A stretch of DNA of 64,000 bases from contig NC_092374.1 of assembly GCF_030028105.1 (NCBI RefSeq), positions 9,042,998 to 9,106,997 on the forward strand. Reading direction: 5' to 3'. Below, piece after piece: positions 5,250 to 59,106 of the stretch (positions are counted from its first letter, which is position 1; every line of letters begins with the position of its first letter). The translations under genes and the position numbers were made by a program. The DNA comes from Mobula birostris. Taxonomy: Eukaryota. Under the pieces are notes generated by a model. The model worked only from the letters and a program-made list of their open reading frames with translations. It was not told the DNA's origin and did no database searches.

Positions 5250-5298
5250 ATGCTATTCTTTCTACTTAGCGCCATTGTCCTGAGTGTCTCTGCAGTGT
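5250..5298 (+). CDS. Siglec-15-like receptor exon 1: signal peptide MLFFLLSAIVLSVSAV
   Basis: ATG with purine at -3, 16 mostly hydrophobic codons and a perfect GTAAGT donor in phase 1, matching the phase-1 acceptor at 9992. Confidence 0.8.
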
Positions 5299-6424
5299 GT
5301 AAGTATCTTGAAATAAAAAGCAGTGAAAGGTTTTTCTGACTGTTTTATCTGTGAAAAGTGTAGGAGCTGGAATGAGTTCGCAGTGGCAACTGAGCAGGTT
5401 CAATTATGGGTCTCATGGACACACACAGTCTTTCAGAATCTGTGCTCTGTGTGTGTGTGCGTGTGTCTGTGTGTGTGTGTGAAGGAAAACTTGAAAAATC
5501 TAATTAAAATGTAATGGTTGGAGTCACCAAGGCTGAATCCTGTTCTGTACCCCACGTCTCTGGAGGGAGAGATTTTTTCTCGAGTGGAACTGTAGGGCGG
5601 TGTGATCCTGGCACTGAGAGTGAGAGATTTTGAAATTGGAACAGATTCTGGGTGATTCCTTCAAGAAAGAGGGTCGGGGCCGGTCGGATTACCAATAGTG
5701 TCTCTGATAGGAGCGTTCAACACCGGAATTGGTGAGGGCTAAAGGAAGAGGGAATTTCAGTGTGAGGGTCACTGAAGCTGGAAGCACCGGTAGATAAGGT
5801 TAAGGAGGCAGACAGGAAACTGGCCTTCATTATCCAGTGCATAGAGTATGAAAGCAGAGAGGTTACGGTACAAATGTATCAACTATTGGGTTAGCCACTT
5901 GCTCTGTGTGCACGTCTGATCACAACTGACAGGGAGGACACAATTGTCCCGGAAACGCTGTAGAGGAGATTCAACACTCTGTCTCCTGAGATGGAGCATT
6001 GGGTGACATCGTTCAAGTTGAAGTTTGATTACAGTTTACCCATACATACCCCCGTTAGTTCTGTAATAGTACTGATAACCTTCCCCCACAAACCAAAAAC
6101 CCCTGGACATTCCCATACAACACGTGTAAAAGAGCCAACGGTTCCGTGTGGGTAAATGAGCAATATGGGTCAGGAACCAGTCCCATTTCATGTCTAATTC
6201 TCGGTGTTAAATATGCTCTTTGACAATATTTCAAGTGTATATATCGATCATTTGGGTTTTTCGAAGCACCGGCAACATTATCCCAACAATCACAACACGC
6301 TGGAGGAACTCAACAGGTCGGACAGCACCCGTGGAAACGATGAGTCGGCGTATCGAGCCGGAACCACGGATGCTGCTCGACCTGCTGAGTTCCTCCAGCG
6401 TGTTGTGAGTGTTGCTTTGACCCC

Positions 6425-7240
6425 AGCATCTGCAAATTATTTTGTGTTTAGCATTATCACAAATCGCCTCTGTATTTTGTACAGTTGTCTCCCTGTTGCA
6501 CTCTCATCCCAATGCTTCTGCCATGTCTCCTCAATACGTGTTTCAATAATGCTCTTGACTTCCGCTTTGCTAAGAGGGATCTGGACCTCTATTATAGACG
6601 ATTTGAGCGATTGTTTAGCTATACTATCCACCTTTTCATTACCCTCCACTGAGCAGGAACCCAAAGAAAGCTTAATTCTACCCGATGTTTGGTCAGTGTA
6701 TATAACTTGCATAGAATCTCCAATAAAATATCTTGTACACTTTCTGATTTTCTTGATTTGATCGGGGTTAATGCAGATAAACTGTCTGAACAGGTTACAG
6801 CCTTTTTGATATTATTTTCTTCTATCCAAGATACTGCACTCAATATTGCTATTAATTCTGTTGTGTACACTGATAAATGGTTTGATGTTCTTTTCCTGAT
6901 ACTAGTTTTGCACTGAGGAATGTAGACTGCAATACCTGTATGGCCAGATCTAGGGTCTTTTGATCCATCCGTAAATATTACAAGTTCATTTCTAATATGC
7001 CATTCTTGTAATATCTGTTTGATTCCATAGTTAGACTTTTTTAAACGTTGTTGCAGGTTTTTATCTACTGTATGCATTGTAAAGAGCCATGCAGGAACAT
7101 CAGATATTGGAACTGTAGGGCTATATTCCATTTCGTGTAGACCATATTTTTGTGTTGCATCCCCAATCCATCCAAAACAATTTTTGAAAAATTTCAAATA
7201 TACTTTATTCAAAAATAAAGTTATATTCAATTACCCATTC
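6425..7240 (-). mobile_element. RNase H-bearing LINE fragment (I/Nimb-like clade)
   Basis: ORF 6619-7230 contains RNase H motifs VIFTDGSK, ELIAILSA, CSDSLSAL and LWVPA. The next frame continues VEGNEKVDSIAK...WQKHWD. Confidence 0.8.
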
Positions 7241-9991: not shown

Positions 9992-10372
9992 CCGCTGATA
10001 ATAATGGATGGACCATGGAGATTCCGGACAAGGTGACAGGGAGAGAAGGGAATTCCTTGTTTCTGTTTTGCTTTTTCACTCCCCCTTTCAATGAATACGA
10101 GGGGAACATCAGCATCATTTGGAAGAATGCGAAGGGAAACGTGACATTTTTACATTACACCAATTATCCATCAGCACATGGGTTTGAAAATCACATTTGG
10201 AACAACAAAGACAGTCGCTACCAAATTCTGGGGAACCCACGGAAGAACGATGCTTCAATAGTCATCAAACAACTGAGGAGCGACGAGAATGGAAAGGGAT
10301 TCTGTTGTCAAATTGATTTCACAGAAGAATCAACAGGACAATGTGAAGAAGGTATTCGAACCAAAATAACAG
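9992..10372 (+). CDS. Exon 2: Ig V-set domain 1, strongly Siglec-15-like
   Basis: Acceptor ctctgtcttcacag, donor gtgagg, phase 1-1, 381 nt open. GWTMEIPDKV...LFCFFTPP...YEGNISIIWK...RYQILGNPRKNDASI...FCCQIDF...GIRTKIT parallels the recalled Siglec-15 WSMQVP...LPCTFTHP...RFRLLGNPRRNDLSL...YFCRVEF. Confidence 0.9.
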
Positions 10373-13272: not shown

Positions 13273-13635
13273 ATGTCCAAGGTGCCAGATTATCACCAAT
13301 GACTGTAAAGGTGGGAGATTCTGCAACACTTCCCTGCAACTTCACACCTCCTGACAAGAAACCCAGTTCCATCGGTATCATCTGGATGAAGGGGAATCTT
13401 CCAAATGTATCCATTGTCTTCAATCAGACTCGTTACCACTCTGCCAACCGACCCTACACCAACACTGTAAATGAAGGAGATCGATATGAGCTGGTGGGAA
13501 ACCCAGAGCAGGGAAACGCCTCCGTCAAAGTGACGAAACTCAGACTGAACGACAACAGCAAATATTTCTGTCATGTTTGGTTCAAGAACGCCAAAACAAC
13601 AGTGATTCAGGATGAGACGAGCCTGCAGGTTGAGG
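13273..13635 (+). CDS. Exon 3: Ig V-set domain 2
   Basis: Open frame DVQGARLSPMTVKVGDSATLPC...IIW...RYELVGNPEQGNASVKVTKLRLNDNSKYFCHVW...LQVE. Branch-like aactaat lies about 22 nt upstream and the GTGAGT donor is phase 1. An alternative in-phase acceptor exists at 13282. Confidence 0.9.
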
Positions 13636-14078
13636 GTGAGTAAACATCTATCTCAGCATTCTGGGAACGATATAAACACATCGAACTTTTGTCAGAAGGA
13701 ATGAGCTTCCAGTGAGGAGCTGGGGCCGAGATTGGCTCAATCCCCTTGGGCTCCATTCCTAGTCCTGGGCTCCCCAACCCCCTCACTCAGTACCGCCCCC
13801 AGTGGACAGAGACAGTGGATTCCAATCCAGGATAGGTGGAGCTTCCTGCCACAGGGTCAGAGGTTTAGACACTCATTTGGCCGCTGAATGACCAGACTGG
13901 CCTGAGCTATTTACATCTGTGTCTGATATTAAAGACCCAGAAGCTTCTACAGACAATCACCAATCAGTTTCCACACTGAGAATTTGTCGTCATTCTCCTG
14001 CTGGGTCTCTCCCATTCTTCATCTTTCCCAGAGCTGAGGGACTTTGTTCCCATGCACTCGAGAATAACGCTCCCCAAG

Positions 14079-14287
14079 TCACAGCCACAACCCTGGAGTT
14101 GTCCCTTGTAACTGATACTGTAACTGGAGGGATCTCCCTCTGCTCTGTCAATGGGAACCTCCTGCAAACATCACGTGGATCAATCCTGGGAAGAACTTAA
14201 CTGCCCCTAAGCAGCAGTGAGGAGAGTCACACAAGACCTCAGACTATGTGAGAGATACTTCACCCCAGGCTGGGTGGAAGCGACAGC
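14079..14287 (+). pseudogene. Pseudo-exon: degenerate Ig C2 exon (copy of 19035-19388), frameshifted and cut by a CR1 insertion
   Basis: ccccaag acceptor in phase 1. gggaac-ctcctgcaaacatcacgtggat aligns with gggaacccccctgcaaacatcacgtggat of the intact exon with a 1-nt deletion. Homology stops where CR1 starts, just before the F-strand Cys. Confidence 0.8.
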
Positions 14288-14617
14288 AGAATGGCATTGA
14301 ATGAATACAGGAAAGACTTGAGTCAGATCTACCTACCCAAGGAGAGATTGAGTGCATTGCCCATTCGAGCTGCCACTTACGTGGTCTACTTTCTTGTGAT
14401 TGTGAAAGATGATAGAAAATCTACAGAGCAGAATGTTGAGTCCATCTGGGTAGAAATTAAGAATAGTAAAGGGAAAAAATGACTGGTGGGTTTTGTCTAT
14501 AGGCCAATTAATAAGAATATTGCAGTGGCAGAGGTGATTAACCAAGAAATAACTGAGGCTTTTAAGAACGGAATGTCAGTTGACGTGGGGGATTTTAACT
14601 TCTACATAGATTGGGTG

Positions 14618-16054: not shown

Positions 16055-17967
16055 AGGAAGAAAGAGCAAAACATTTAGAAAGGAGTGGTTCCATTAGACA
16101 GACGCAGCAGGGATTCAGAAAGGGCAAGTCCTGTTTGACAAACTTACTGGAGTTCTTTGAGGACATAATGAGTGCAGCGGATAGAGGGGAACAGGTGGAT
16201 GTCATATACTTGTATTTCCAGAAGGCGTTCGATAAGGTGCTGCACAAGTGACTTATAAATAAGATATGGATGCATGGAGTCTGAGGAATTGTATTGGCAT
16301 GGATAGTGGATTGGTTAACCAATAGAAGGCAGAGAGTTGGTATAAATGGGTGTTTCTCCGGTTGGCAGTCAGTGGTGAGTGGGGTGCCGCAGGGGTCGGT
16401 GCTGAGCCTGCAGCTGTTTACCATTTACAATGATGATTTGGAAGAGGGGACTGAGTATAGCATAGCAAAATTTGCTGATGACACTAAACTGAGTGGAAAA
16501 GCAAATTGTATAAGTCTGCAGAGGGATTTAGATAGATTGAGTGAGTCTGGCAGATGGAATACAATGCTGGTAAATGCCAGATCATCCACTTTGGAAGGAA
16601 TAATAGAGGAGCAGATTACTATTTAAATGGTGAAAGATTGCAGCATGCTGTTGTGCAGAGGGACTTGGGAGTGCTTGTTCATGAATCGCAAAAAGTTGGC
16701 TTGCAGGTGCAACAGGTTATTAAGAAGGCAAACGGAATGTTGGCCTTCATTGCTAGAGGGATTGGATTCAAGAGCAGGGAGGCCATGCTGCAACTATACA
16801 GGGTTCTGGTGAGGCCGCACCTGGAGTACTGTATGCAGTTCTGGTCTCCATACTTGAGAAAGGATATTCTGGCTTTGGAATGAGGAGAGATTGAGTTGCC
16901 TGGGATATACTCTCTGGAATTAAGAAGAATGAGCAGGGATCTTACAGAAACAAACAAAATTTTGAAAGAGATAGATAAGATAGAAGTAGCAAAGTTGCTT
17001 CCATTGGTAGGTGAGACGAGAACTAGGGGATATTGCCTCAAGATTCAGGGGAAAAGATTTAGGACTGAGATGAGGAGAAACTGTTTTTCCCAGAGAGTGG
17101 TGAATCTGTGGAATTCTCTGCCCAGGGAAGCAGTTGAGACTTCTTCACTGAATGTATTTGAGATACAGTTAGATAGATTTTTACATAGTCAGGGAATAGG
17201 CAGGTAGGTGGAGCTGAGTTCATGGACAGATCAGCCATGATCTTATTGAATGGTGGAGCAGGCTCGATGGGCCAGATGGCTACTCCTGCTGCTATTTCTT
17301 ACGTTCTTATGTTTTTTCACTTTCTGGTGGTTGAGCAGAGGTGAACAGCAATGACAAAGGTACAAAATTGTGGGTGTTGATGGGAGTCCTCTGGGGACAT
17401 TGTCCTCCACTGCTGGTTCTGATGATGTGTGTTGGGTAACATCTCTGTCAGAGGGAAGTGATGGATCATTGCCCAAAAGCTGTGACTGTCTGTCTGTGGG
17501 ATATGTGGAACATTTCTTGTTTAACTCCGACGCAGAGAACCCGTCCCTCAGCTGCTTTTCCAATACATTTAAAACTGCATTGGTGCTGCTCCCTGCATGT
17601 AGACAGAACTCAGAAGCGTCCTTGGTGACACAAAGTTCAAAGTACATTTATTATCAAAGTATGTATGCTATATACAACCCTGAGATTCATCTCCTTACAG
17701 AACCCAATAAAAAAAGACAATTAAACATGCAATGTGCAGAACAAAAAAACAAATTGTGCAAGCAATAAAAGTTAGCGATAACATTCAGAATTGAAGGTCA
17801 CCAAAGTCAATCCACAGACATGAAACCAGTCATCCCTGCAGCCAGTCAGAGTAGGAGTAGGAATGAGATGGAGAATCAAACTCATAGACGGGGATGAAAT
17901 ATTCTTGAATAAAATGTGATTAATACACTCAACTAATCCAGATTGTTCTTACTCTAAACTGTCCAAG

Positions 17968-18324
17968 ATGTCAGTGTATCATCGGTGATTGTATAAAGGC
18001 AAGATTCTCCCACACTGCCCTGTTATTTCACACCTCCTGACACAAAACCCAACTCCACCACTATCCTTTGGATGAAGGGGAATCCTCCAAATGTGTGCAC
18101 TGTCCTCAATCAAACTCATTTCCACTCCATCGACCCTCCCTACACCAATGCTGTAAATGAAGGAGGCCGATATGAGCTGGTGGGAAACCCAGAGCAGGGA
18201 AACACCTCCATCAGGGTGACGGACCTCAGACTGAATGACCTCAGCAAATATTTCTGTCATGTTTGGGTCAGGAATTCCACATGGGAGGCAGAGATTCTGG
18301 ATGAGACAGGACTGCAGGTCATGG
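17968..18324 (+). pseudogene. Pseudo-exon: Ig V domain 3 (duplicate of V2) with in-frame TAA
   Basis: Aligns with V2 and its flanking intron. It has lost the AG homologous to 13271-72 and has an in-frame TAA at 17994-17996; the rest is open (LPCYFTPP...RYELVGNPEQGNTSI...KYFCHVW) with a phase-1 GTAAGG donor. Confidence 0.8.
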
Positions 18325-19034
18325 GTAAGGAAACAGCTCCATCAGAGTTGTGTAATTGATAAAAACATATTGAACATCCATGAGGAGAAATGAGCTCCCA
18401 CTGAGAAACTGGGGCTGAGATTGGCTCGATCTCTTGTGGGTTCCAATCTCGGCCCTGCGTTCCCCTCACTCACTACCACCACCAGTGGTAAGGAGACCGT
18501 GTTAATTCCATCTCTGAATAGGACCATAAAACATAGGAACAAATTTAGGGCATTCGGCCCATGGAGTCTGCTTCACCACTCCATGATGGCTAATTTATTA
18601 TCCCTCTCAACCCCATTCTCATGCCTTCTTCCCATAACCTTTGAGAGCCTGACCAATCAAGAACCTATCAACTTCCACCTTATATAGTAGTAATGGGGAA
18701 CAAGGACTTGGTGTAGAGTCTGAATGAGTATTTTCCATCCACTAGCAGTACGTCCGTACGAGCAGCTGGTGCAGGTCACAAACCCTGGTATTCAAACAAT
18801 AGCACCAGGCAGACAATCTCTGAAGAGTATTGATAATGTCAGGGGTCACCCATCTTGTAAAGACACTTCCCAGAAGAAAGCACCTCTGCAGAAAACTTTG
18901 TGAAGACCAATCATGATCATGATACCATGATCACCCAGGTCCTGCGACACGTCACATAATGAAGTTGATGTTCTCTAAAATAAAAATTGTCAAAATTTCA
19001 ATGAATTTAATTTGACTTTCTTTCCTCCCCCAAG

Positions 19035-19388
19035 GCCCGGCCACCATCCTGAGTCTAACTCTTGTGACTGATGATACTGGAGCCACCCTCGTGTGCAAGG
19101 CTGAAGGGAACCCCCCTGCAAACATCACGTGGATTGACCTTGAGAACAGCACACTGCCCATGAGCAGCAGCGAGATGAGAGTCACCGGAGATCTGGAGAG
19201 TGTGGGAAAGCTGGTGCTGCCCAGGCCGAGAGGGAGCTACCGCTGTGTGGCTGCGAATCAGCACGGAAATGACACCTGTGAGATCCACCTAGCCAAGACG
19301 GGAACAAGTGCACTGGCCCTCTCCGTTGCATTGTCCTCTTTAGCAATCATTCTTTTGGTTGTTTTTGTTGTCTGGTTTCTGAAGAAAG
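19035..19388 (+). CDS. Exon 4: Ig C2 domain + transmembrane helix
   Basis: Acceptor tctttcctcccccaag, donor GTGAGC, phase 1-1. LVCKAEGNPPANITW...GSYRCVAANQHG is Siglec-type C2, followed by TM ALALSVALSSLAIILLVVFVVWFL-KK. Confidence 0.92.
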
Positions 19389-19757: not shown

Positions 19758-19802
19758 TATCTCTCTCTCTCTCTCTGTCTCTCACTCTCTCTCACTCTCT
19801 CT
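19758..19802. repeat. (CT)n microsatellite
   Basis: Imperfect CT dinucleotide run. Confidence 0.85.
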
Positions 19803-23470: not shown

Positions 23471-23542
23471 GTTCCCGTCAGCACAGATGCTGTGTTGATT
23501 CTGGTGTAGCGAGTGGTGTGAAATCACGAACTGCAGAGCCAG
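23471..23542 (+). CDS. Exon 5: juxtamembrane cytoplasmic exon GSRQHRCCVDSGVASGVKSRTAEP
   Basis: Acceptor ctctgtgtctttgacag, donor gtaatg, 72 nt, phase 1-1. Splice sites are conserved in the paralog at 4172. Confidence 0.8.
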
Positions 23543-24315: not shown

Positions 24316-26728
24316 AAGATTCAAGATTGAAGATTCAAAAAACTTTATTATCATTCTAACCATACATCAGCTCTGCAGGGCAGAATGAGACAGCGTTTCT
24401 CAGGAGCAGTGCAATCCTAACATAACAAACGCAGCACTAAATAATAAACATAACAATAAATAGTAAAACACAACAGCCACATGTCAGTTAAAATCAGTTA
24501 TAAGTGTCTAGTGCAAGTTAAAAGTGTCCAAAGCAGAGTCAGGTAGAGCAGCTATTTAGCAGTCTGACTGCCTGTGGGAGGAAGCTGTTTAGTAGCCTTG
24601 TGGTTTTAGTTTTGATGCTCCTGTAACGTTTGCCTGATGGCAGAAGAGCCAACAGTTCATGGAGAGGGTGTGAGGGATCTTTGATGATGTACCGTGTCTT
24701 CTGGATTGATCGACTCTGAAAGAGGTCTTGGGCAGAAGGTAGGGAGACCCCAATAACCTTCTCTGCTCCCCTAACCACCCTTCTGCAAGGCTTTTTTGTC
24801 GACAGCACTGCAGCTGGAGTACCAGGTTGTGATGCAAAAGGTCAGCACACTCTCAACCATGCCTCTGTAGAATGTAGTTAAGATGTTAGTGGGGAGTGAT
24901 GCTTTTTTAAGCTTCCTCAGAAAGTGCAATCTCTGCTGGGCCCGTTTCACAATCCCAGTGGTGTTCCTGGACCAGGTGAGATTGTCCGAGATCTGCACCA
25001 CAAGGAACTTAATGTTTTCCACTCTCCACTGTGGAGCCGCTGATGCTGAGGGGTGTGTGCTCAGGCTGAGACCGTCTGAAATCGACGATCATCTCCTTGG
25101 TTTTGGTGACTTTAAGCATCAAGTTATTATCCCTGCACCAGCTCTCTAGGTGTTTGACCTCCCCCCGTACATAGTTTCATCATTTTTGCTGATGAGCCCC
25201 CCTACTGTGGCATCGTCTGCAAATTTAATGATCAGGTTCCCCTCCTTGAATCTGGCTGCACAGTCATGTGTTAGCAGTGTAAACAGCAGTGGGCTAAGCA
25301 CACAGCCTTGTGGGGATCCAGTGCTCAGTGTGATGGAGTCAGAGATGTTCCTGCCAACATGGACTGACTGTGGTCTCTCTGTCAAGAAATCCAGAATCCA
25401 GCTGCACATGGTAGTGCTAAGGCTAAGCAGCGACAGTTTCTCCACTAGTCTCTGCGGGATGATGGTATTGAACGCTGAACTGAAATCAATGTACAGGATT
25501 CTGGCATAGGTGTCTTTGTTGTCCAAGTGAGAGAGAACTGTGTGCAGTGTGGTGGATATTGCGTCCTCTGTAGAGCGATTTGGACGATAAGCAAACTGTA
25601 GAAGATCCAGTGATGAGGGGAGGCTGGCTGTGATATGAGGCTTGACAAGCCGTTCAAAACATTTCGTCACTATGGGGGTCAGGGCAACGGGACGGTAATC
25701 ATTCAGACAGACTACACCTGATTTCTTTGCTACAGGGTTGATTGTGGAGGTTTTGAAGCATCTGGGGACAATGGCTTGACTAAGGGAGAGGTTGAAAATG
25801 TCTGTCAGGACACCTGCTAATACATCAGCACATTCCTTGAGCACACGTCCAGGGATGTTGTTGGAACCTCCGGCTTTTCGTGGGTTGACCCTGGCAAGGG
25901 TCCTCCGTGTTTGCTCTGGATCAATGATTGGAGCCGGCTTGTCAGATGGTGGAAAGGGACTGGCTCTCCCCCTTGCTGTAGTGTTTGATGCTTCGAAGCG
26001 GGCAAAGAAATTGTTAAGCCTGTCTGGTAGAGAGGTGTTGCTGTCATTAGTTTTCTGCCTGATCTTGTAGTCTGTCAGAGCTTTAATTCCCTGCCACATC
26101 CGTCTGGTGTCACCTGTGTCACAGAAGTGTCCATGTATTTTGCCCGCGTAGGCCCTTTTCACTTTCCTGATCCCTAGTGAAAGTGCAGACCTGGCTGAGC
26201 GAAGCGCACTCCTGTCCCCCGATCTGCAGGCTGTGTCACGGGCCTTCAGTAGTGAACGCACCTCTGTTGTCATCCATGGCTTTTTATAACCACGTGCAGT
26301 GAAGGTTTTCATCACAGTGACATCCTCCGTGCATTTGGCTATGTAGCTGATTACTGCCCCCGCATACTCCTCAATGTCTGTATGATCACCCTAGGAGGCT
26401 GCTGTTTTGAATATGTCCCAGTCTGTGTGCAAAAAAGTCTTGTAGTGCTGAGGCTGCTCCTTTTGGCCAGACCCTTATCTCTCTTTTCTCTACTCTCACA
26501 CGTTTAAGCAGTGGTTTATATGCTGGTGTTAGCATGACAGATATGTGGTCAGAGTGGCCAAGATGGGGGCGGGGAGCTGCTTTGTATGCCTGTGGTGTGT
26601 TGGTATAAACCAAGTCCAGTGTGCTGTCTCCCCTGGTTTTGAAATCCACATATTGCCAGAATTTGGGGAACACAGTCTTTAAGCTGGTGTGGTTAAAGTC
26701 CCCAGCAATCACCACAAAGCTGTCAGGA
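24316..26728 (-). mobile_element. Rex1/Babar LINE, 5'-truncated (APE end + RT), few frameshifts
   Basis: HPDSFVVIAGDFNH, 389-aa RT ORF ([44 protein letters not shown]) and an (AATCTTG)n tail. Candidate TSD tgtttc at 24310-15 and 30269-74. Confidence 0.92.
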
Positions 26729-26976: not shown

Positions 26977-27642
26977 TTAAAAGAGTCCCGCAGGGTGAAG
27001 TGACTGACAATATTTACAAGAAGTATATTTACAGGTTAAGTCTATCAGGCGGTCGAGTCCGTCGCTGTGACCTCCGTAGCACCGGCGGTGATTGCACCCT
27101 GCGCAGACTTGGCAGTCCCTGGTCATCGTCCTGATCTCCTCAAGGGAGTAAGGCAGGTTCTGGGCTTTCACGAAGTGGAAAAGCCAGGTGACTCCCGGGT
27201 GGAAAAGGTCTACATGTAGGGCGTATAGCCGGTCGATCTGCGCGCTGGCACATGTTCCCCGGGATAGGGCATCAGAGGGCTCGTTGAGCTTCCCAGGCCT
27301 GTACATGATGTCATAGTTGTAGGTAGAGAGTTCGATTCTCCACCTCAGAATTTTATCATTTTTGATTTTGCTCCGCTGCTGATTATTAAACATGAACGCG
27401 ACTGAGCGCTGGTCAGTTAGCAGGGTGAACCTTTTGCCGGCAAGATAGTGCCTCCAGTGCCTTATAGCTTCCACTATGGCCTGGGCCTCTTTCTCTACCG
27501 CAGAGTGCCGAATTTCAGGGCCTTGAAGGGTACGGGAGAAGAACGCCACTGGTCTTCCTGCCTGGTTGAGTGTAGCAGCCAGCGCAAAGTCGGAGGCGTC
27601 ACTCTCTACTTGGAAGGGAATGGCCTCATCCTCCGCATGCAT
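26977..27642 (-). CDS. Gypsy RNase H + integrase N-terminal Zn finger (truncated)
   Basis: VESDASDFALAATL, EKEAQAIVEAIRHWRHYL, TDQRS, N(EPS)DALSR, H..HPG...CQVC. Confidence 0.85.
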   Translation of the reverse strand: MHAEDEAIPFQVESDASDFALAATLNQAGRPVAFFSRTLQGPEIRHSAVEKEAQAIVEAIRHWRHYLAGKRFTLLTDQRSVAFMFNNQQRSKIKNDKILRWRIELSTYNYDIMYRPGKLNEPSDALSRGTCASAQIDRLYALHVDLFHPGVTWLFHFVKAQNLPYSLEEIRTMTRDCQVCAGCNHRRCYGGHSDGLDRLIDLTCKYTSCKYCQSLHPAGLF

Positions 27643-27899
27643 TGTTGCTTTGGCAATGTCCCGTTTTATGCGGTTGAAGGCCGTGTGGGCCTCGGCAGAG
27701 AGGGGGAATGTGGTGGACTTGACCGGGGGCGGGCCTTGTCTGCATAGTTAGAGACCCATTGGGCGTAATATGAAAAGAAGCCCAGGCACCTTTTGAGGGC
27801 TCTGAGGGTATTGGGAAGAGGGAGTTCCAACAGGGGGCGCATACAGTCGGGGTCAGGGCCAATGACTCCATTCTCCACGACACACTCAAGGATAGCAAG

Positions 27900-28643
27900 T
27901 CAGGTGGTCCCAAATGCACACTTGTCCTTGTTATAGGTGAGGTTGAAAGATTTGGCCACTTGGAGAAATTTTTGGAGGTTGTTGTCGTGATCCTGCTGGT
28001 CGTGACCGCAGATGGTGATGTTATCCAGATATGGGAACATGGCCTTCAGTTGGCACTGGTCCACCATCTGGTCCATTGCCCTCTGGAAGACAGATACGCC
28101 ATTCGTGACACCAAAGGGGACGCGCAGGAATTGATAAAGCCTGTCGTCCGCCTCGAAGGCAGTGTAAGGGCGGTCCTCCCGGCGGATGGGGAGCTGATGG
28201 TAAGCGGATTTTAGGTCTATGGTCGAGTACACCTTGTACTGTGCTATCTGATTGACCATATCCGCGATGTGGGGTAGAGGGTACGCGTCGAGCTGTGTGA
28301 ACTTATTGATGGTCTGGCTATAGTTCACGACCATCCTATTCTTCTCCCTGTTCCGAACAACGACCACCTGCGCCCTCCAAGGACTTGTGCTTGCCTCAAT
28401 GACCCCCTCCCTGAGCAGCCGCTGCACCTCCGACGTAATGAAAGCTCTGTCCCCCGCGCTGTACCTCCTGCTTTTAGTTGCCACGGGTTTACAGTTGGGG
28501 GTCAGGTTGGTGAACAGCGGTGGGGGAGGGATCCTGAGGGTGGAGAGGCTGCAAGTGGTGTCGGTAGTGTGGCAGTTGGCATGATGTTGGGTGGGATGTG
28601 TGGGTCGGTGTGTGTGTGTGGTCAGTAGCGGGGTACGTGACAT
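27900..28643 (-). CDS. Gypsy reverse transcriptase (frameshifted relative to flanks)
   Basis: SPWRAQVVVV, YSTIDLKSAYHQL, VPFGVTNG, YLDNI. Confidence 0.9.
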   Translation of the reverse strand: MSRTPLLTTHTHRPTHPTQHHANCHTTDTTCSLSTLRIPPPPLFTNLTPNCKPVATKSRRYSAGDRAFITSEVQRLLREGVIEASTSPWRAQVVVVRNREKNRMVVNYSQTINKFTQLDAYPLPHIADMVNQIAQYKVYSTIDLKSAYHQLPIRREDRPYTAFEADDRLYQFLRVPFGVTNGVSVFQRAMDQMVDQCQLKAMFPYLDNITICGHDQQDHDNNLQKFLQVAKSFNLTYNKDKCAFGTT

Positions 28644-28788
28644 ATCTCTACAAAACGGGATTTATGACAGTAATTGGCGGGAGAGGCCCATCATACTTCA
28701 TTGTCACGCTTTTCAGGTGGCTCTGGAAGTCCAACCCCAACAGCACAGGGGCACATAGTTGAGGCAAGACCAGTAACTTAAAGTCCCG

Positions 28789-30006
28789 CTATTCTGTGCC
28801 CTGCACCACTAGCGTCGCTACACAACCCCCCCGGATGTCTGTTGTATGCGACCCGGAGGCCATGGTGACCCTCTGACTTACCAGCCGTATCATGAGTCCA
28901 CAATGCTGCACCGTGGCCGGGTGGATAAAACTCTCCGTGCTGCCTGTGTCAAACAGGCAGCTTGTCCTGTGCCCCTCCAACAGGATGTCCATCATTGACC
29001 TTGCGAGCTGGTGGGGAGCGCTTTGGCCAAGGGTCACGGAAGCCAGGGTGGGGTCGCTGTCTTGGTCCGGCGCGGTGGGGTGGCCCATGAGCACCCGTTG
29101 GTCGTAGGCGGTGGGAGGTGGCGCCGACCAAGATGGCTGCCCCCATGTCTCGCACGTGGTGGCAGTGTGCAGGCAAGATGGCGGCCCCCATGTCTCGCAC
29201 GTGGTGGCAGTGTGCAGGGAAGATGGCGACCCCCACGTCTCGCACGCGGCGCTGCTAGATCCCGCTTGCGGTTTTGACTTACAGACCTTGGCGAAGTGGC
29301 CCCTCTTTCCGCAGCTGGAACAGGTAGCTTGTCGGGCCGCGCAGCGTTTCCGGGGGTGCTTCTCCAGTCCGCAGAAGTAGCACTTCGCGGACTCACAACT
29401 GGCTGCAGCTGAGGTCGATTCGCCGGCGGGTTGCGGGGTCTGCGGCGCCCACGAGGCCATCGGGGGATCGCGTGCCTGGAGAGCCTCGGAGTTATGCAGA
29501 GCGGCCTCCAACGTATCAGCCAGCTCGATCGCCGAACTTAGGGTAAGATTGGCTTTTCCCAGCAGCCGCTGGCGCGCATACACGGACCTGGTCCCCGTGA
29601 CGAAGGCGTCTCTCACTAGGAGTTCTGCATGCTGCGCCGCCGTCAGCTCCTGGCAATTGTAGACCCGCACGAGTGTCTGTAGGGCCCGGACAAACTCAGC
29701 ACTCGATTCCCCGGACCGTTGTTGCCGTGTCGCTAAGCGATGCCGAGCATAGAAGCTGTTTATCGGCCGCAGGTATTGTCTTTTGAGTGCGTTCATCGCG
29801 CCGTCGCAGTTCGGCTGGTCTCTGATCAGCAAATAAACCCGTGGACTGACCCTGGAGAGTAGAACTCTGTGCTTTGCTACGGGGTCGGTCGCTTTAATCT
29901 CCTCTAGATACGCTTCGAAGCAGGCCAGCCAGAGTTCGAAAGCATTTCCAGCTTCGGGTGTTTGCGGATCAAGATCTAATTTGTCTGGTCTCAGAGCCTG
30001 TTCCAT
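28789..30006 (-). CDS. Gypsy Gag + aspartic protease (405 aa)
   Basis: Double Cys/His knuckle CYFCGLEKHPRKRC...CSSCGKRGHFAKVC and protease motif LFDTGS. Confidence 0.9.
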   Translation of the reverse strand: MEQALRPDKLDLDPQTPEAGNAFELWLACFEAYLEEIKATDPVAKHRVLLSRVSPRVYLLIRDQPNCDGAMNALKRQYLRPINSFYARHRLATRQQRSGESSAEFVRALQTLVRVYNCQELTAAQHAELLVRDAFVTGTRSVYARQRLLGKANLTLSSAIELADTLEAALHNSEALQARDPPMASWAPQTPQPAGESTSAAASCESAKCYFCGLEKHPRKRCAARQATCSSCGKRGHFAKVCKSKPQAGSSSAACETWGSPSSLHTATTCETWGPPSCLHTATTCETWGQPSWSAPPPTAYDQRVLMGHPTAPDQDSDPTLASVTLGQSAPHQLARSMMDILLEGHRTSCLFDTGSTESFIHPATVQHCGLMIRLVSQRVTMASGSHTTDIRGGCVATLVVQGTE

Positions 30007-32943: not shown

Positions 32944-33033
32944 ATTTGCAGCTTGAAAGTGACCCTATTTACAGCATTGTCAATTCAACAGCAGAGGCTA
33001 CTCCCCAGGTGGCTCCCGCTACAGGACAGAACG
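32944..33033 (+). CDS. Exon 6: cytoplasmic DLQLESDPIYSIVNSTAEATPQVAPATGQN
   Basis: Acceptor ctttgtgcctttgacag, GTGAGT donor, 90 nt, phase 1-1, Tyr motif IYSIV. Confidence 0.82.
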
Positions 33034-41506: not shown

Positions 41507-41578
41507 ATCCTCAGGAGTCTCTAAACCAGCAGCTCTACAGCAATGCTAACTTTCAAACAGATTCCCAGACGAAGATGG
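41507..41578 (+). CDS. Exon 7: cytoplasmic DPQESLNQQLYSNANFQTDSQTKM
   Basis: Acceptor ctatgccctttctag, GTAAGC donor, 72 nt, phase 1-1. Homologous to exon 9 (DP..S....LYS...F.....TK.). Confidence 0.82.
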
Positions 41579-43131: not shown

Positions 43132-43209
43132 ATCCCCAGGAGGATCCCCATCTGCCTGTTTACAGCATCGTGCAGATTCGAAAACATTCCGAAGCAGGGC
43201 AGCGGAAAG
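43132..43209 (+). CDS. Exon 8: cytoplasmic DPQEDPHLPVYSIVQIRKHSEAGQRK
   Basis: Acceptor ctctgcatcctttccag, GTAAGG donor, 78 nt, phase 1-1. PVYSIV repeats PIYSIV of exon 6. Confidence 0.85.
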
Positions 43210-48080: not shown

Positions 48081-48583
48081 TAACTAGACTTTTCAATATT
48101 TAATATGTTTCAATGAGATTCCCTCCTCACTCAGTGAGTACAGACCTTTTGACTTTAATAATAAATAAATAATAATAATAAAAATAAAAAATATTAATAA
48201 ATCAGAGTCAAAAACCCAAAGTCAATTAAACCCTTTAATTCTCGGAATCATCCTCTCCTATGCCAGCACATCCTTTCTTAAATACGAAGTTCGAAACTGC
48301 TCACAATACCCTGTACTCCAAGTATAGTTTGGCCAATGCCTTATAAAGTCTCAGCATTACAGCCTTGCTTTTATAGAGCATAGAACAGCTTTTCATTTCA
48401 TGGTGCCTGTGCTGACCATGATGCCAACTTCAACTGATCACACCTGCCTACAGACAGCTTTCATCTTTGTTTCATTAGCTCCTAACAGGTCACCTCCCCC
48501 GAGGTAGAGACAGGGCAGTTTTAAGGAGGTAATGCAGTGGGGAGGAGATGAGGAAGAATTTTAACTATTTGTGTATTTTGCAG

Positions 48584-48655
48584 ATCCCCACGACTCTCCA
48601 AGTCATGGTCTTTACAGTAAAGTCCAATTTCCAATACCCAGACGCACGAAGACAG
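48584..48655 (+). CDS. Exon 9: cytoplasmic DPHDSPSHGLYSKVQFPIPRRTKT
   Basis: Acceptor tttgtgtattttgcag with tttaac branch, GTAAGG donor, 72 nt, phase 1-1. Confidence 0.85.
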
Positions 48656-50585: not shown

Positions 50586-50959
50586 AAACTGATCAGTTTA
50601 TGAGTAGTTCTCAGGAACAGAATCCTACCATAAACCAAGGAGACCTGCAGCAGCATCTCTCAATAACTACATTAAAATCCTAAAATGACTGTAATTCTGA
50701 GGCTTTGGTCAGATCACACTGGAGGTATTGTAAAACGCAAACACGGGAAATCAGCAGATGTGGGAATTTCAAGCAACACACATAAAAGTTGCTGGTGAAC
50801 GCAGCAGGCCAGGCAGCATCTCTAGGAAGAGGTACAGTTGACGTTTCAGGCCAAGACCCTTCGTCAGGACTAACTGAAAGAAGAGCTAGTAAGAGATTGG
50901 AAAGTGGGAGGGGGAGGGGGAGATCCAAAATGATAGGAGAAGACAGGAGGGGGAGTGAT

Positions 50960-51500: not shown

Positions 51501-51527
51501 TTTAAAACAGAATTGTTTCTCTTTCAG

Positions 51528-51574
51528 CTGCAATTTATGCAACAGTTGCCCATCCTGATGAACAGTCTTCAGAC
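51528..51574 (+). CDS. Exon 10: cytoplasmic AAIYATVAHPDEQSSD (or read-through VSND* to 51589)
   Basis: Acceptor ttgtttctctttcag in phase 1, IYATV motif, GTAAGC donor in phase 0. If the donor is unused, the stop is TAA at 51587-89. Confidence 0.72.
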
Positions 51575-52689
51575 GTAAGCAATGATTAAACTCTCTGTGA
51601 GTGGACCCTTGCCCCTGCTACTTTAGGACAACGTTGAAGGAGTTGCGAATCCTTGGTTGAATTGGAACTCTTGAGACCCAGGACCTCTGTGAGGGCTCCT
51701 CGGAAATGAAAATGTCTCTCACTGCGCCAGGATGTCCTAGAACACTTTCTTAGAAGTGATGCACTTCTGAAGTGCAGGCACCATTGTAAGGAAGCGGGTC
51801 TCAACCCAAAACGTCAACCATCCCTCTGCCTCCAAAGATGCTGTTCAACTCACAGACGTCCTCCACATTCCGGTGTCCCCAGCCTCCTGTGTCCACGCAG
51901 CTGGATTCCACTCAAGAATGGCAATGAGTAAACTGGTGTTGTATGAGGAGTATGTTGTTAATAGTGCTAGACTTCCTGGTGCTAGAGTAAGTTATAGCTT
52001 TGAGAATTACACTTACTTTAACATCTCGATAATCTCTGTTTGCTAGTTTTCTTGGTCTTTTCATTCCAATGCCAGATTTGGCTTTGTGACCATCTATATA
52101 ACTGGGGAGCTACTCAATTGGTTCAGAGAAGTGTTAGAGATCAAGAAGTTATGCTTAGTATAAATGTTTTTTTTTGTTTTCTTTTGGAAAATAGAGAATT
52201 AACACAAGTAAAGGGAAAGATTTGGGAAAGGGATAAAAAAATGAAAAAATTAAGTAAATAAGTACATAGGGATTGGATAATTATGTCTGCGGGCAGGAGC
52301 AAGCATGAACAAATTAGGATATAAACACCTACAATGGTTGATACATAGGCTTATATACAACATTTTGGACCAGTGGAAATGGTCCAGAAGGGTTATATGG
52401 AAACTATTATTACCATTTTTCTTAAAAACTAATTCCATTACTTAGCCTAATAGGTTAGATTTACCACAGTACATAATTATCTACTTAAATGTTTATTTTC
52501 CATTTATATCATCTCAATGTGTACTTAAGAATGTATAAATAATTGTAGTTTTATACATATAAAAAAATGGAAAAGGTTATATGTGTGAAAAAAGTACATG
52601 ATATTTGTGAATTCCTTATCCAAATAAAAATAAGATTAAAAAAAAAGAATTTTGACTAGGTGTACTTGGATATGGAGATATGGTTTTTT

Positions 52690-55600: not shown

Positions 55601-56445
55601 CATACAAAACAAGTGTCATACAACAATGGATAATATTAAAAAAGAGTGGGAAAAGGAGTTGGGTACAGCGATAGAGGAGGTTATATGGAATGAGGCTTTG
55701 GAGTATGTTAACTCCTGTTCCATCAATGCCAGGCATTGTTTAATACAATTTAAAATCCTACATAGACTTCAAAGTAAGGATTCATAAAATATTCCCAGAG
55801 GTGTCCCCAATGTGTGAGGAATGCAAGTCCTCGGAGGCAAATTTGGTACATAGTTATGCTTTATGTCCCAGGATACAAGAGTATTGGGAGCAAATATTTG
55901 AGGTCCTATCAAAGGTACTAAAGGTTCAGATAATACCAGACCCCATTTTAATCATTTTTGGAACTTCTGCGAGGGCAAATAAATTCCAGGCTACCCAGCA
56001 ACAACTCCTGACCTGTGGCATACTTAATGGAAAGAAACTCATACTGATGTTCTGGAAAAAGGAGGAAGCTCCATCACTCAGACAATGGCTGGCTGCATTA
56101 ATGGATACTCTGCATCTAGAGAGGATAGGATACGTTATCAAGGAATTTGAAAAAATCTGGCAACCATTACTGTTGTATTTAGAAGAGACCGACAGCTGAA
56201 CTAAGTGTGGGGGGTGCTAGGACCTAAACAGCACATACGAGAGGGGTGAGGGAAGGGTAGGGCTGGGGAGGGGAAAGGAGACGGGGTGGTAGGGTTTCCT
56301 TTGCTTTTTGCTTGTTTACTAAACATACATTCATTTGACTTTCATTATGCTGTTCCAAGAAAGAAAAGAAAAAAGAAGCATTGTACTTTAGGACATTGTC
56401 GGTTGTGGTTAAGCTGATGTTGCTTCACAATAAAAGCATTTGAAA
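52690..56445 (+). mobile_element. L1-clade LINE (second family), near-complete ORF2 (APE-RT-Cys-rich), multiple stops
   Basis: GDLNFVLD...DR, ISDHSP, LWETFKAYVRG, KSPGSDG, YRPISLLNSDQKI, ISLYVDD, GGLTLPNF, FFRYLQLR, CEEC...HSYALC; 3' UTR with caataaaa. Confidence 0.92.
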
Positions 56446-57499
56446 ACCAAGAATGGTAATCAATAGATAACAAGTAAATATTGGGACATTATCTTTCGTG
56501 AAATATTCCCCCCACATATGTTCAAGTCATGCAGCCACCACATTGTTGTGAAATTGGAACCCTGTGTGCCTTTTGTGGAAGGAAATGAGGTGTCCCTGCA
56601 TGAGTTAACACATTCAGCGAAAATAACTCCTTCCTGATATGTGCCTGTGAAATGCTTCAGCAAGCCACTCAGTCCACGTGGGACTGAGTCTGTCCACAGT
56701 TAAGTATAGGCCATAAATATAAGCCCACCCGTAATAAGAACAATTCCCTCTGTGTGATATTTTCCTTCACTCCTACCAATCATTGCATTACAAACTTTTA
56801 ACCGCCCCTAATATTTCAAAGTTCAAAAGTTCAAAGTAAATTGTATTATCAAAGTACATATATGTCACCATATACAACCCTGAGATTCATTTTCTTGTGG
56901 GCATACTCAACAAATCTATAGAATAATAAGCAGAAGAGAAACGATGAAAGACCGCGCAACTAGAACATTCAAACAAAGTGCCGAAGAAAACAAACTGTGC
57001 AAATTGTCGGCGTTTGGAAGTTCATGGTAGGGAGAGTTTCTCCCTTCTGCCGCTTGCGTTAGATGATAAGTCGATCGGGACTTTGAGACTTTTTTTTACC
57101 GTGCCCATGGTCTGCTCTTTATCAAATTATGGTATTGCTTTGCATTTGTATTGTTGTAACTCTATGTTATAATTATGTGGTTTTGTCAATTTTAGTCTTG
57201 GTTTGTCCTGTTTTTTTTGTGATATCTTTCTGGAGGAACATTGTATCATTTTTTAATGCATGCATTTCTAAATGACAATAAACAAGGACTGAGTGTCCTC
57301 ATAATCTAAAAAATACAAAAAAGAAGGAATAATAATAGTAAATAAATAAGCAATAAATATCGAGAACATGAGATGAAGAGCTGTGGGAACATTTCAATGA
57401 CAGAGCAATTGAAGTTGAGTGAAGTTAACCCTTTTGGTTCAAGAGCCTGATAGCTGAGGGGTAGTAACTGTTCCTGAACCTGGCAGTATACAGGTAGGA

Positions 57500-58920
57500 A
57501 AAGGGCGGCCAAGTGATCAAATTCCCCAAAATGTGGTCAGTATTTGCACCGAGGTCTGCAACCCAAATAGTAGACAAAGCAAAATGATATTTATCGGAGT
57601 TAATAATCAGTCCCTGTTGGCTTAAGCACTTGAAAAATGTGTGGAGATGTGATAAGTGTTCAGTTTTGGATGTGCTTCTGACAAGTGTGGTGTCAGGATA
57701 AAAAAAAGAAAATCTCAGTCTTTTAACACAGGTTGCTGGAAAGCCTGATTTGCATTTTTCACTCCAAATGCTATGCATAGAAACTCAAATAAGCCAAGCG
57801 GGGTTTAACAGCAATTTTGGGAATGTCCTCAGCACAGACAGGCAATTGATGGTAGCCACTGACTAAGTCACTTCAGAAAAAATTATCTTTCCAGCTAAAC
57901 AGAATCAGAATCAGAACTGGCATGTGTCGTAAAATTTGTTAACTTAGCAGCAGTTCAATGCAATACACAGTATAGACGAAAAAATAATAATAAGTAAATA
58001 AACAAATAAAATACAGTACAAATATATTGAATAGATTAAAAATAGTGCAAAAAGCAGAAATAATATATACTAAAAAATGAGGTAGTGTCCAAGGGTTCAA
58101 TGTCCATTGAGGAATCGGATGGCAGAGGGGAAGAAGCTGTTCCTGAATCGCTGAGTGTGTGACTTCAGGCTTCTGTATCTCCTACCTGATGATAACAGTG
58201 AGAAAAGGGCATGCCCTGGGTGCTGGAGGTCCTTAATAATAGAAGCTGCCTTTCTGAGAAACCACTCCTTGAAGATATCCTGGCTACTTTTGTAGGCTAG
58301 TACCCAAGATGGAGCTGACTAGATTTACAACCTTCTGCAGCTTCTTTCGGTCCTGTGCAGTAGCCTCCCCCCACCCATACCAAACAGTGACACAGCCTGT
58401 CAGAATGCTCTCCATGGTACATCTATAGAAGTTTTTGAGTGTACTTGTTGACATGCCAAATCTCTTCAAATTCCTAATTAAGTATAGTCGATGTCCTGCC
58501 TTCTAATACCAATTGTTTGCCATAAATGTGTTGAATATATGGGGGTGGGGGTGCCCTTGTTAAGGAAAAGGTAATTGCCACATGGATGGCAACTACCATT
58601 GGGCTTAGCCACCATGTGCAGGGATGAAGCCCAATGGCTATTTAACCTGTGTACGATGCCAAGCATTGCCATTATTAGCAAACTCAGCCTTCACGTTCTT
58701 CAGCTTTCCTGAGCCGAGTCTACGTGCACAAGCGTGCATCGGCCAGCCGGTTGTGGAATTGTGGTGCCCAACCCCGTGCTTTGTGACTGCACTGGAAAAT
58801 TTGGCTTGGTGAGGTTTGGGAATTTGCCCAGCAGGCCAGTAAATTCACATGTGGAGGCACATATGCTAGACAGAGCTGTTGAGGGGGATTTACTGGGAGT
58901 AAGTACAGGGTAATGACCCA
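57500..58920 (-). mobile_element. Old Gypsy RT remnants (57500-57745, 58490-58920) split by a Rex-type 3' fragment (57900-58480)
   Basis: MLGIVHRLNSHWASSLHMVAKPNGSCHPCGNY and EHLSHLHTFFKCLSQQGLIINSDK resemble Gypsy RT segments. Confidence 0.65.
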
Positions 58921-58968
58921 AAGTCATTTGTAGTTCTTTAGATATACTAACAGTCCTTTGGTGCACAG

Positions 58969-59106
58969 GAAATCTACGCTGAGCAGAGGCCTAGCAACTT
59001 TAGCCAAGATGAAGTCCCATGTATAGCATCATCTACTGAAGCAGAACGTCATTCATCGTGTCCCATAAGTCCAGCTCCTGCTGTTGCTTTGAAACCTGAG
59101 CTTTAA
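58969..59106 (+). CDS. Probable terminal exon EIYAEQRPSNFSQDEVPCIASSTEAERHSSCPISPAPAVALKPEL*
   Basis: Perfect TACTAAC branch point at 58945-51, acceptor cacag, phase 0 matching the exon-10 donor, 45 open codons starting with an IYA motif, TAA at 59104-06. Confidence 0.5.
   Translation, partial: EIYAEQRPSNFSQDEVPCIASSTEAERHSSCPISPAPAVALKPEL

What the first reader, a model, noticed from the sequence alone, without database searches (positions are those of the whole stretch)
5250..59106. Siglec-15-like receptor rebuilt as a V-V-C2 non-lectin receptor with a long multi-tyrosine tail
Seen: ten phase-compatible exons give a 526-codon open frame (SP-V1-V2-C2-TM-tail), plus 45 aa if the 58969 exon is used, spread over about 54 kb of TE-filled introns. 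Established: canonical Siglec-15 has one V and one C2 domain, an essential F-strand Arg, a TM Lys that pairs with DAP12, and a short tail. Inference: this is a lineage-specific Siglec-15 derivative with inverted signalling logic, namely no sialic-acid Arg, a neutral TM and a scaffold-like tail of about 145-190 aa with 5-6 Tyr motifs. It may be an undescribed cartilaginous-fish immune receptor family.
Basis: partly seen in the sequence, partly recalled or inferred. Interest (0 to 1): 0.85.

Follow-up and report, generated by a model that had tools for sequence, protein, structure and literature searches.

The report
Long-tailed Siglec-15-like receptor of manta ray
This is a real, spliced gene for a three-domain immune-type surface receptor of the giant manta ray, a long-tailed member of an old, so far undescribed shark-and-ray sister family of Siglec-15 that has lost the sugar-binding arginine; it is interesting for comparative immunology but is not a new kind of receptor.

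Summary
The gene is real. Ten exons on the + strand (5250-51589), all with AG/GT and phase 1 junctions, give a 530-aa protein: signal peptide, V1, V2, C2+TM in one exon, and a 148-aa tail with five tyrosines. Residues 18-530 are identical to the second half of RefSeq XP_072113536.1 (Mobula birostris, "uncharacterized protein"), a model that wrongly fuses it to an upstream paralogue. An RNA contig shows the V2-to-C2 splice.

The optional exon at 58969 is unsupported: it has the wrong phase and no homologue.

It is not Siglec-15 rebuilt. Manta has its own canonical Siglec-15 orthologue on the same chromosome. This gene belongs to a sister family (V1-V2-C2) found in chimaera, sharks and rays. That family has Lys-TM short-tail forms and neutral-TM forms with multi-tyrosine tails.

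Other long-tail members keep the Arg and strict ITIMs. Manta and stingray copies have Gln instead, and the manta tail has no strict ITIM.

The upstream paralogue is 96% identical in the ectodomain, but has an Arg in its TM and a short tail. That is the usual pattern of a paired receptor.

The scan noted sister genes of this cluster in neighbouring windows.

The parts
5250..5298 (+). Exon 1: start codon and signal peptide (16 codons + 1 nt)
   Evidence: ATG at 5250, donor GTAAGT at 5299. The leader plus junction matches the N-terminus of stingray P0103.
9992..10372 (+). Exon 2: V1, the Siglec-15-like V-set domain with Gln at the Arg143 position
   Evidence: Pfam V-set. Best PDB match is Siglec-15 7zoz, E 8e-9. 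Falls in the family V1 clade, 98/94. Residue table.
13273..13635 (+). Exon 3: V2, the second V-set domain with His at the Arg position
   Evidence: Pfam V-set 1e-15. PDB 7zoz E 4e-9. V2 clade 98/92. An RNA contig joins 13635 to 19035.
14078..14401 (+). Decayed C2+TM exon (stops and frameshift) whose TM is of an Arg-bearing type
   Evidence: tblastn hits from 18 family proteins. 67.6% nt identity to exon 4. TM part is 14/20 identical to Rhinoraja P0118. No RNA depth.
17961..18335 (+). Decayed V2-like exon (in-frame TAA, acceptor AG lost)
   Evidence: 77.7% nt identity to exon 3 plus flanks. Zero RNA depth, and skipped by the spliced contig.
19035..19388 (+). Exon 4: C2-type Ig domain plus an uncharged transmembrane helix, ending FLKK
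   Evidence: Pfam I-set/Ig_3. AG/GT boundaries. RNA contigs in three runs.
23471..23542 (+). Tail exon T1 (Cys-rich juxtamembrane piece)
   Evidence: AG/GT, phase 1. Homologous pieces follow the TM in sawfish, skate and stingray proteins.
32944..33033 (+). Tail exon T2 (DPIYSIV)
   Evidence: 100% match to P0001. Aligned with skate, sawfish and shark tails.
41507..41578 (+). Tail exon T3 (QLYSNA, a YxN motif)
43132..43209 (+). Tail exon T4 (LPVYSIV)
   Evidence: Aligned with the xIYSxVxxRRxSE unit of skate and electric-ray tails.
48584..48655 (+). Tail exon T5 (GLYSKV)
51528..51589 (+). Tail exon T6 (AAIYATV) with stop codon TAA
   Evidence: The terminal IYAxV motif is conserved from chimaera to manta.
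51590..52194 (+). Probable 3' untranslated region
   Evidence: Run X3 holds 0.69 of the sampled words of 51528-52000. A 532-nt contig lies on 51651-52194 at the same low depth as the coding exons.
4171..4221 (+). Last coding exon (T1') of the upstream paralogue A. It is a copy of T1 with a 1-nt deletion that brings an early stop
   Evidence: tblastn and direct reading. 69.6% nt identity to T1 plus flanks.

Best explanation
The window holds one complete gene of the giant manta ray, here called gene B, for a type I membrane receptor of 530 aa. Its order is signal peptide, V1, V2, C2, an uncharged TM, and a 148-aa cytoplasmic tail built from six small phase 1-1 exons.

It is the long-tailed member of a chondrichthyan family that is the sister of Siglec-15. 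Members of that family come as Lys-TM or Arg-TM short-tail forms, which look like adaptor-coupled activating receptors, and as neutral-TM forms with many tail tyrosines, which look inhibitory. Directly upstream on the same strand lies paralogue A. Its ectodomain is 96% identical, but it has an Arg in the TM and a tail cut short by a frameshift. A and B therefore look like a paired receptor.

Shown here: the exon structure, the open frame, one splice junction, the family relations, and the loss of the sialic-acid signature in V1 (Arg143 to Gln, Tyr154 to Cys). V2 also lacks that signature.

Inferred: the ectodomain binds a ligand other than sialic acid in the canonical way. After ligand binding, Src-family kinases phosphorylate the YxxV tyrosines (YSIV twice, YSKV, YATV) and the YSNA tyrosine. 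These then recruit SH2 proteins, most likely SHP-type phosphatases or Csk, and Grb2 at YxN. The net effect would be to damp the signal that A sends through an ITAM adaptor.
For: Gene structure and frame.

Annotation: identical to the second half of RefSeq XP_072113536.1 of Mobula birostris.

RNA: a GT..AG joint 13635|19035 that skips the decayed V exon, exon 4 covered in three runs, and the 3' end held by run X3.

Ectodomain fold: three Ig domains predicted with mean pLDDT 85 and pTM 0.79.

Family: 24 chondrichthyan relatives at E 1e-59 or better. Same V1-V2-C2-TM-long-tail plan in Heptranchias P0005 and Rhinoraja P0107, and a long-tailed member with three V1 copies in Callorhinchus (P0123). 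The tail exons align unit by unit across species.

Tree: family V1 clade 98/94, V2 clade 98/92, with canonical Siglec-15 in a separate clade.

Residue table.

Paired partner: V1 95.8%, V2 95.9%, C2 96.6% but TM 64.5% identity between the two halves of the RefSeq model. A's TM motif LARYIV is shared with stingray P0103. A's last exon with its early stop is at 4171-4221.

Motifs: YSSV is the Csk SH2 site of Cbp/PAG (PMC3492796). Definition of paired receptors, and of gene conversion in Siglec-11/16: PMC5701461.
Against: None of the five tail tyrosines fits the strict ITIM ([ILVS]xYxx[ILV]) or ITSM pattern, although relatives have one to three such motifs. An inhibitory role is therefore weaker here than in the relatives.

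The tail splice junctions were not seen in RNA. The T5-T6 joint was not among those listed, and the signal near T5 cannot be resolved. RNA depth is very low, about 3-6.

No binding, phosphorylation or adaptor data exist. Co-expression of A and B is untested. The DNA of A could not be fetched, so gene conversion and recent duplication cannot be told apart at the nucleotide level.
Confidence: 0.6

Rival explanations
1. Gene B is a receptor under relaxed constraint on its way to loss. It is intact and spliced but functionally hollow: the lectin site is gone, the ITIM fit is gone, and it is transcribed only at trace level.
For: V1 lost Arg143 and the aromatic 154 that other long-tail members keep. 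The tail has no strict ITIM or ITSM, whereas relatives have 1-3. RNA depth is only about 3-6. The locus is littered with decayed exons.
Against: A 530-codon frame over ten exons, with all splice sites intact, would not last long without selection. The Gln at the Arg position is shared with a stingray that is only 68% identical, so the lectin loss is old and the gene has stayed open since. The five tyrosines and their +3 Val are all kept.
Confidence: 0.2
2. The tail is a positive signalling scaffold, like a transmembrane adaptor. It would recruit Src-family kinases, Grb2 or PI3K rather than phosphatases, so gene B activates rather than inhibits.
For: There is no strict ITIM. One YxN (Grb2-type) motif and several spaced tyrosines recall adaptor proteins.
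Against: The same tail units in chimaera, sharks, skates and the electric ray do carry strict ITIMs or an ITSM. Four of the five manta motifs are Y[S/A]xV, the type bound by Csk, a negative regulator. The neighbouring paralogue already has the features of the activating partner.
Confidence: 0.15
3. One reading: this is the manta's Siglec-15 itself, remodelled in this lineage by adding a V domain and swapping the TM and tail.
For: Siglec-15 is the best solved match of both V domains. NCBI names several relatives 'Siglec-15'.
Against: A separate canonical V-C2 orthologue with the Arg exists in sharks and in Mobula birostris on the same chromosome. The family V1 clade is outside the canonical clade and includes chimaera, so the split is at least as old as chondrichthyans.
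Confidence: 0.04

Closest known systems
Siglec-15 (human Q6ZMC9, structure 7ZOZ; canonical orthologues such as Carcharodon XP_041041398 and the Mobula birostris protein P0053)
   Same: It is the best solved match of V1 and V2. The B-F disulfide cysteines and Trp44 (in V1) are kept. The GNPRxND and YxC motifs match. A C2-type domain is followed by a single TM.
   Different: Two V domains instead of one. Arg143 is Gln or His. Tyr154 is Cys. The C95-C104 disulfide is absent. There is no TM Lys. The tail is 148 aa with five tyrosines. It falls in a separate clade, and a true orthologue coexists in the same genome.
RefSeq automatic models of the same family in other chondrichthyans (for example Heptranchias perlo 'Siglec-12 isoform X3' XP model P0005, Rhinoraja longicauda LOC144611565 P0107, Callorhinchus LOC103188797 P0123)
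   Same: Same V1-V2-C2-TM plan, a neutral TM, and tail units that align one by one, including the terminal IYAxV.
   Different: Those keep Arg143 plus Phe154 in V1 and have strict ITIMs or an ITSM. Some carry extra V copies. The manta gene has lost these and keeps a dead third V exon.
Primate paired Siglecs: Siglec-5/14 and Siglec-11/16
   Same: Neighbouring genes with near-identical ectodomains. One partner has a tyrosine-bearing tail. The other has a basic TM residue and a short tail. The similarity ends sharply at the TM (PMC5701461).
   Different: They belong to an unrelated branch of the family (CD33-related). Those pairs bind sialic acid through the Arg. Here the Arg is missing in both partners, the basic residue of the partner is an Arg near the outer end of the TM, and gene conversion is inferred, not shown.
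Cbp/PAG-type transmembrane adaptors
   Same: Several spaced tyrosines, including Y-S-x-V sites of the kind that dock Csk (PMC3492796).
   Different: Those adaptors have almost no ectodomain and are palmitoylated raft proteins. There is no sequence homology. The likeness is in the motifs only.

Membership tests
Siglec-15 (orthologue) | One N-terminal V-set domain followed by one C2-set domain | tested here: not met
   Two V-set exons precede the C2 exon. The 3-Ig model has pLDDT 85.
Siglec-15 (orthologue) | F-strand Arg143 that forms the salt bridge to sialic acid (PMC10264397, PMC7226832) | tested here: not met
   Gln in V1, His in V2.
Siglec-15 (orthologue) | Other ligand contacts Trp44 and Tyr154 (PMC10264397) | tested here: inconclusive
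   V1 keeps Trp44 but has Cys at position 154. V2 has neither.
Siglec-15 (orthologue) | Disulfides C64-C142 and C95-C104 of the V domain (PMC10264397) | tested here: inconclusive
   The C64 and C142 equivalents are present in V1 and V2. There is no Cys pair in the C'-C'' region of V1 (read from the sequence).
Siglec-15 (orthologue) | Lys in the TM that couples to DAP12/DAP10 (PMC7226832) | tested here: not met
   The TM segment ALALSVALSSLAIILLVVFVVWF has no charged residue.
Siglec-15 (orthologue) | Falls inside the Siglec-15 clade and is the only such gene in the genome | tested here: not met
   V1 lies in a separate clade, 98/94. The canonical-type P0053 is on the same manta chromosome.
Chondrichthyan V1-V2-C2 Siglec-15-like family (known only from automatic annotation) | V1 and V2 each fall in the family's own clade | tested here: met
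   V1 clade 98/94. V2 clade 98/92. The nearest relative outside manta is stingray P0103.
Chondrichthyan V1-V2-C2 Siglec-15-like family (known only from automatic annotation) | His at the Arg position of V2, and C2 plus TM following V2 | tested here: met
   His in 21 of 23 family V2-type domains compared, this one included. Architecture.
Chondrichthyan V1-V2-C2 Siglec-15-like family (known only from automatic annotation) | Long-tail subtype: Cys-rich juxtamembrane piece, DPxxYSxV units, terminal IYAxV | tested here: met
   Tail alignment with skate, sawfish, shark, electric ray and chimaera.
ITIM-bearing inhibitory receptors | At least one [ILVS]xYxx[ILV] motif in the tail (signature as in PMC7226832) | tested here: not met
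   0 of 5 tyrosines fit. Position -2 is P, Q, P, G, A. Relatives have 1-3 fits.
ITIM-bearing inhibitory receptors | Recruits SHP-1, SHP-2 or SHIP after phosphorylation | not testable with these tools
   Needs biochemistry.
Paired receptors (sense of PMC5701461) | A neighbouring gene with a highly similar ectodomain and opposite signalling features | tested here: met
   A versus B: 96% identity in V1, V2 and C2, 64.5% in the TM. A has a TM Arg and a short tail.
Paired receptors (sense of PMC5701461) | Expressed in the same cells. Ectodomains homogenised by gene conversion | not tested
   No tissue labels for the runs. The DNA of A could not be fetched.

The most novel reading that the evidence does not exclude
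Cartilaginous fishes carry an ancient, unpublished sister family of Siglec-15 with a V1-V2-C2 ectodomain, run as paired receptors. In most species the long-tailed ITIM form keeps the sialic-acid arginine, while the Lys-TM (DAP12-type) form has lost it. In manta and stingray a second pair (Arg-TM short tail and neutral-TM long tail) has lost the lectin site altogether and is kept alike in its ectodomain, probably by gene conversion. [quoted passage not shown]
Probability: 0.5. Interest if true: 0.55.

Novelty: new variant of a known kind. Interest (0 to 1): 0.42.

Why it matters
In mammals Siglec-15 is treated as a lone, conserved, activating Siglec with no inhibitory counterpart. This gene and its relatives show that in cartilaginous fishes the Siglec-15 lineage has a sister family with both adaptor-coupled and tyrosine-tailed members. 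They also show that the sialic-acid arginine was lost independently in different members.

That gives a natural series for two questions. The first is what a Siglec fold binds once the arginine is gone. The second is how paired receptors evolve outside mammals.

On the practical side, the RefSeq model for this locus fuses two genes and should be split. For the scan, the finding is a solid gene annotation with a moderate evolutionary point, not a new class of receptor.

Tried and rejected
1. The 58969-59106 exon. It has the wrong phase for every upstream donor. It has no similarity to any family tail and is not repeated in the window. Rejected as part of the gene.

2. A second look at RNA over T5-T6. 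The stretch is swamped by transposon contigs. The T5-T6 joint is not among the 15 joints listed (36 are hidden). The low signal in the bin 48500-48626 cannot be assigned to T5. Only the 3' UTR contig is usable.

3. Fold search of the three-domain model against the PDB. It returns only generic multi-Ig proteins (DIP, IgLON, JAML, MAG) with TM-scores of 0.3-0.4, so it does not discriminate.

4. Fetching the locus DNA of the RefSeq model, to compare paralogue A and gene B base by base. No DNA was served, so the gene-conversion test could not be run.

5. Literature searches for Siglec or Siglec-15 with shark, cartilaginous fish or elasmobranch, and for skate modular domain immune-type receptors. 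No description of this family was found. The library lacks most subscription journals, so absence is not proof.

6. The idea that the lungfish V-V-C2 'Siglec-15' (P0009) shows the two-V plan to be ancestral. In the tree both lungfish V domains sit inside the canonical clade, so that is an independent duplication.
Full report
WHAT IS IN THE SEQUENCE

The window has no gaps. On the + strand, four exons encode Ig-superfamily parts. The first is a leader (5250-5298). The second is a V-set exon (9992-10372; Pfam V-set, E 1e-5). The third is another V-set exon (13273-13635; E 1e-15). The fourth (19035-19388) holds an I-set/C2-type domain and a hydrophobic helix ending FLKK.

Six short exons follow: T1 23471-23542, T2 32944-33033, T3 41507-41578, T4 43132-43209, T5 48584-48655, and T6 51528-51589 with the stop. 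Every internal exon is flanked by AG and GT. All junctions are phase 1. The joined frame is 1593 nt, that is 530 codons plus stop.

The tail exons T2-T5 share the acceptor context (a C/T-rich run, then AG|ATCC..) and the opening Asp-Pro. They look like old tandem copies of one unit. The introns hold reverse-transcriptase ORFs and an LTR element.

INDEPENDENT SUPPORT

A search of 1.8 billion representative proteins with the V1 exon found an 874-aa protein (P0001). Its residues 362-874 are identical to residues 18-530 of the protein assembled here. It is RefSeq XP_072113536.1, "uncharacterized protein" of Mobula birostris.

Its first 360 residues are another V1-V2-C2-TM unit. That unit is spliced straight onto exon 2 of this gene and skips this gene's leader exon. 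The model therefore fuses an upstream paralogue (A) with this gene (B).

The real start of B is supported by the stingray protein P0103. Its N-terminus matches exon 1 plus the junction.

RNA

Four runs of one study hold the V2 exon. One contig joins 13635 to 19035 (GT..AG) with 76 letters on the shorter side. Exon 4 is covered in three runs. The stretch between, including the dead V exon, has no gene-like coverage.

Run X3 also holds 69% of the sampled words of T6 plus downstream sequence, and a 532-nt contig lies on 51651-52194.

The tail junctions themselves were not seen, because transposon contigs crowd the tables. The tail is instead supported by homology. T1 directly follows the TM in sawfish, skate and stingray proteins. 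T2, T4, T5 and T6 align unit by unit with tails from skate, electric ray, a cow shark and chimaera.

The optional exon at 58969 reads its 45 codons only in phase 0. After any phase 1 donor it gives four codons and a stop. It resembles no family tail.

Two relic exons lie between V2 and exon 4. The first is a C2+TM exon at 14078-14401 with stops and a frameshift. Its TM part is 14/20 identical to the Arg-bearing TM of a Rhinoraja protein. The second is a V2-like exon at 17961-18335 with an in-frame TAA and a lost acceptor. It is 77.7% identical to exon 3 with its flanks.

At 4171-4221, 1 kb before this gene's ATG, lies a copy of T1 with a 1-nt deletion and an early stop. This is the last exon of paralogue A.

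RELATION TO SIGLEC-15

Both V domains match human Siglec-15 (7ZOZ) best among solved structures, at E 8e-9 and 4e-9. But sharks have a canonical V-C2 Siglec-15 of about 323 aa that keeps the Arg (P0032). Mobula birostris has its counterpart (P0053) on the same chromosome.

A tree was built from 57 V domains. The V1 domains of the V1-V2-C2 proteins form their own clade (98/94), chimaera included. This clade sits beside the canonical Siglec-15 clade, though the link between the two is weakly supported (83/49). The V2 domains form another clade (98/92). The two V domains of the lungfish "Siglec-15" sit inside the canonical clade, so they are a separate duplication.

This gene therefore belongs to an old sister family of Siglec-15.

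PATTERN IN THE FAMILY

One type has a highly conserved TM with a Lys (FIIGMLCLIPLIKF...) and no tail. NCBI calls it Siglec-15. Its V1 mostly has Leu at the Arg143 position.

A second type has a neutral TM and a long multi-tyrosine tail. Its V1 keeps Arg143 and an aromatic residue at position 154.

V2 nearly always has His at that position.

Manta A, manta B and the stingray protein have Gln at position 143, and Cys or Asp at 154. The lectin signature was thus lost before these rays diverged.

The manta tail has five tyrosines (YSIV, YSNA, YSIV, YSKV, YATV). None fits the strict ITIM or ITSM pattern, whereas related tails have one to three fits.

THE PAIR

Across the two halves of the RefSeq model, V1, V2 and C2 are 95.8-96.6% identical, while the TM is 64.5% identical. 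A's TM carries Arg in a motif shared with the stingray protein, which is only 68% identical overall.

An old split in TM type combined with species-specific likeness of the ectodomains is what gene conversion produces in primate Siglec-11/16 (PMC5701461). Here it remains an inference, because A's DNA could not be fetched.

MECHANISM

Shown: a spliced, open gene for a three-Ig receptor that lacks the canonical sialic-acid site and carries a tyrosine-rich tail.

Inferred: the tail tyrosines are phosphorylated and dock SH2 proteins. Y-S/A-x-V is the type of site that Csk uses on Cbp/PAG (PMC3492796), and YxN is the Grb2 type. This would counter an adaptor-coupled signal from paralogue A.

Rivals are slow decay of a hollowed-out receptor, and a positive scaffold role.

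VERDICT

This is a sound gene and a useful correction of a fused RefSeq model. It is also a moderate evolutionary point: the Siglec-15 lineage has paired, partly non-lectin relatives in cartilaginous fishes. It is a variant of a known kind of receptor, not a new kind.

No paper describing the family was found in the searched library. Earlier notes of this scan list sister genes within 0.1-1.7 Mb on the same chromosome.

Noticed in passing
window 4171-4221 (+): Terminal exon of the upstream paralogue A. It is a copy of tail exon T1 with a 1-nt deletion, so the protein ends 16 residues after the TM. The RefSeq model skips it and reads through into this gene.
   Followed up: partly
window 14078-14401 (+), perhaps continuing at 17316-17348: Decayed C2+TM exon whose TM resembles an Arg-bearing TM of a Rhinoraja family member. 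A weak match to the rest of that TM lies 2.9 kb further on, behind a reverse-transcriptase-bearing insertion. This suggests the exon was split by a transposon. The locus once held a second, activating-type C2-TM cassette.
   Followed up: partly
window 17961-18335 (+): Dead third V exon (V2-like) with a stop and a lost acceptor. Relatives in skate and cow shark use such extra V2 copies.
   Followed up: yes
P0053, P0169, P0171 versus P0032 (not in the window): The canonical Siglec-15 orthologues of batoids (manta, sawfish, stingray) have no Lys in the TM and carry a long acidic repeat tail. Those of sharks keep a Lys. The 'conserved' DAP12 coupling of Siglec-15 may be lost in rays.
   Followed up: no
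family proteins P0006, P0108-P0112, P0114 (not in the window): The Lys-TM members that NCBI names Siglec-15 in elasmobranchs have Leu at the essential Arg position of V1, while the long-tailed members keep Arg. This is an unexpected split of lectin signature between partners.
   Followed up: partly
window 26980-30006 (-): LTR retroelement remains (gag with aspartyl protease, reverse transcriptase, RNase H) in a GC-rich stretch of the T1-T2 intron. A further reverse-transcriptase ORF lies at 25149-26315 (-).
   Followed up: partly
window 50786-50912: A repeat in the T5-T6 intron with summed RNA word depth up to 5e5 in all four runs. It is a very highly transcribed transposon family.
   Followed up: no
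window 5165-5209 (+): The 5' untranslated stretch just before the start codon is conserved at peptide level with read-through sequence in a fused Amblyraja model (P0004). Tandem arrays of this family seem to be mis-joined by the annotation pipeline in several species.
   Followed up: no
window 58969-59106 (+): A 45-codon ORF behind an AG that begins EIYAEQ. It has the wrong phase for this gene and no homologue, so it is probably chance.
   Followed up: yes
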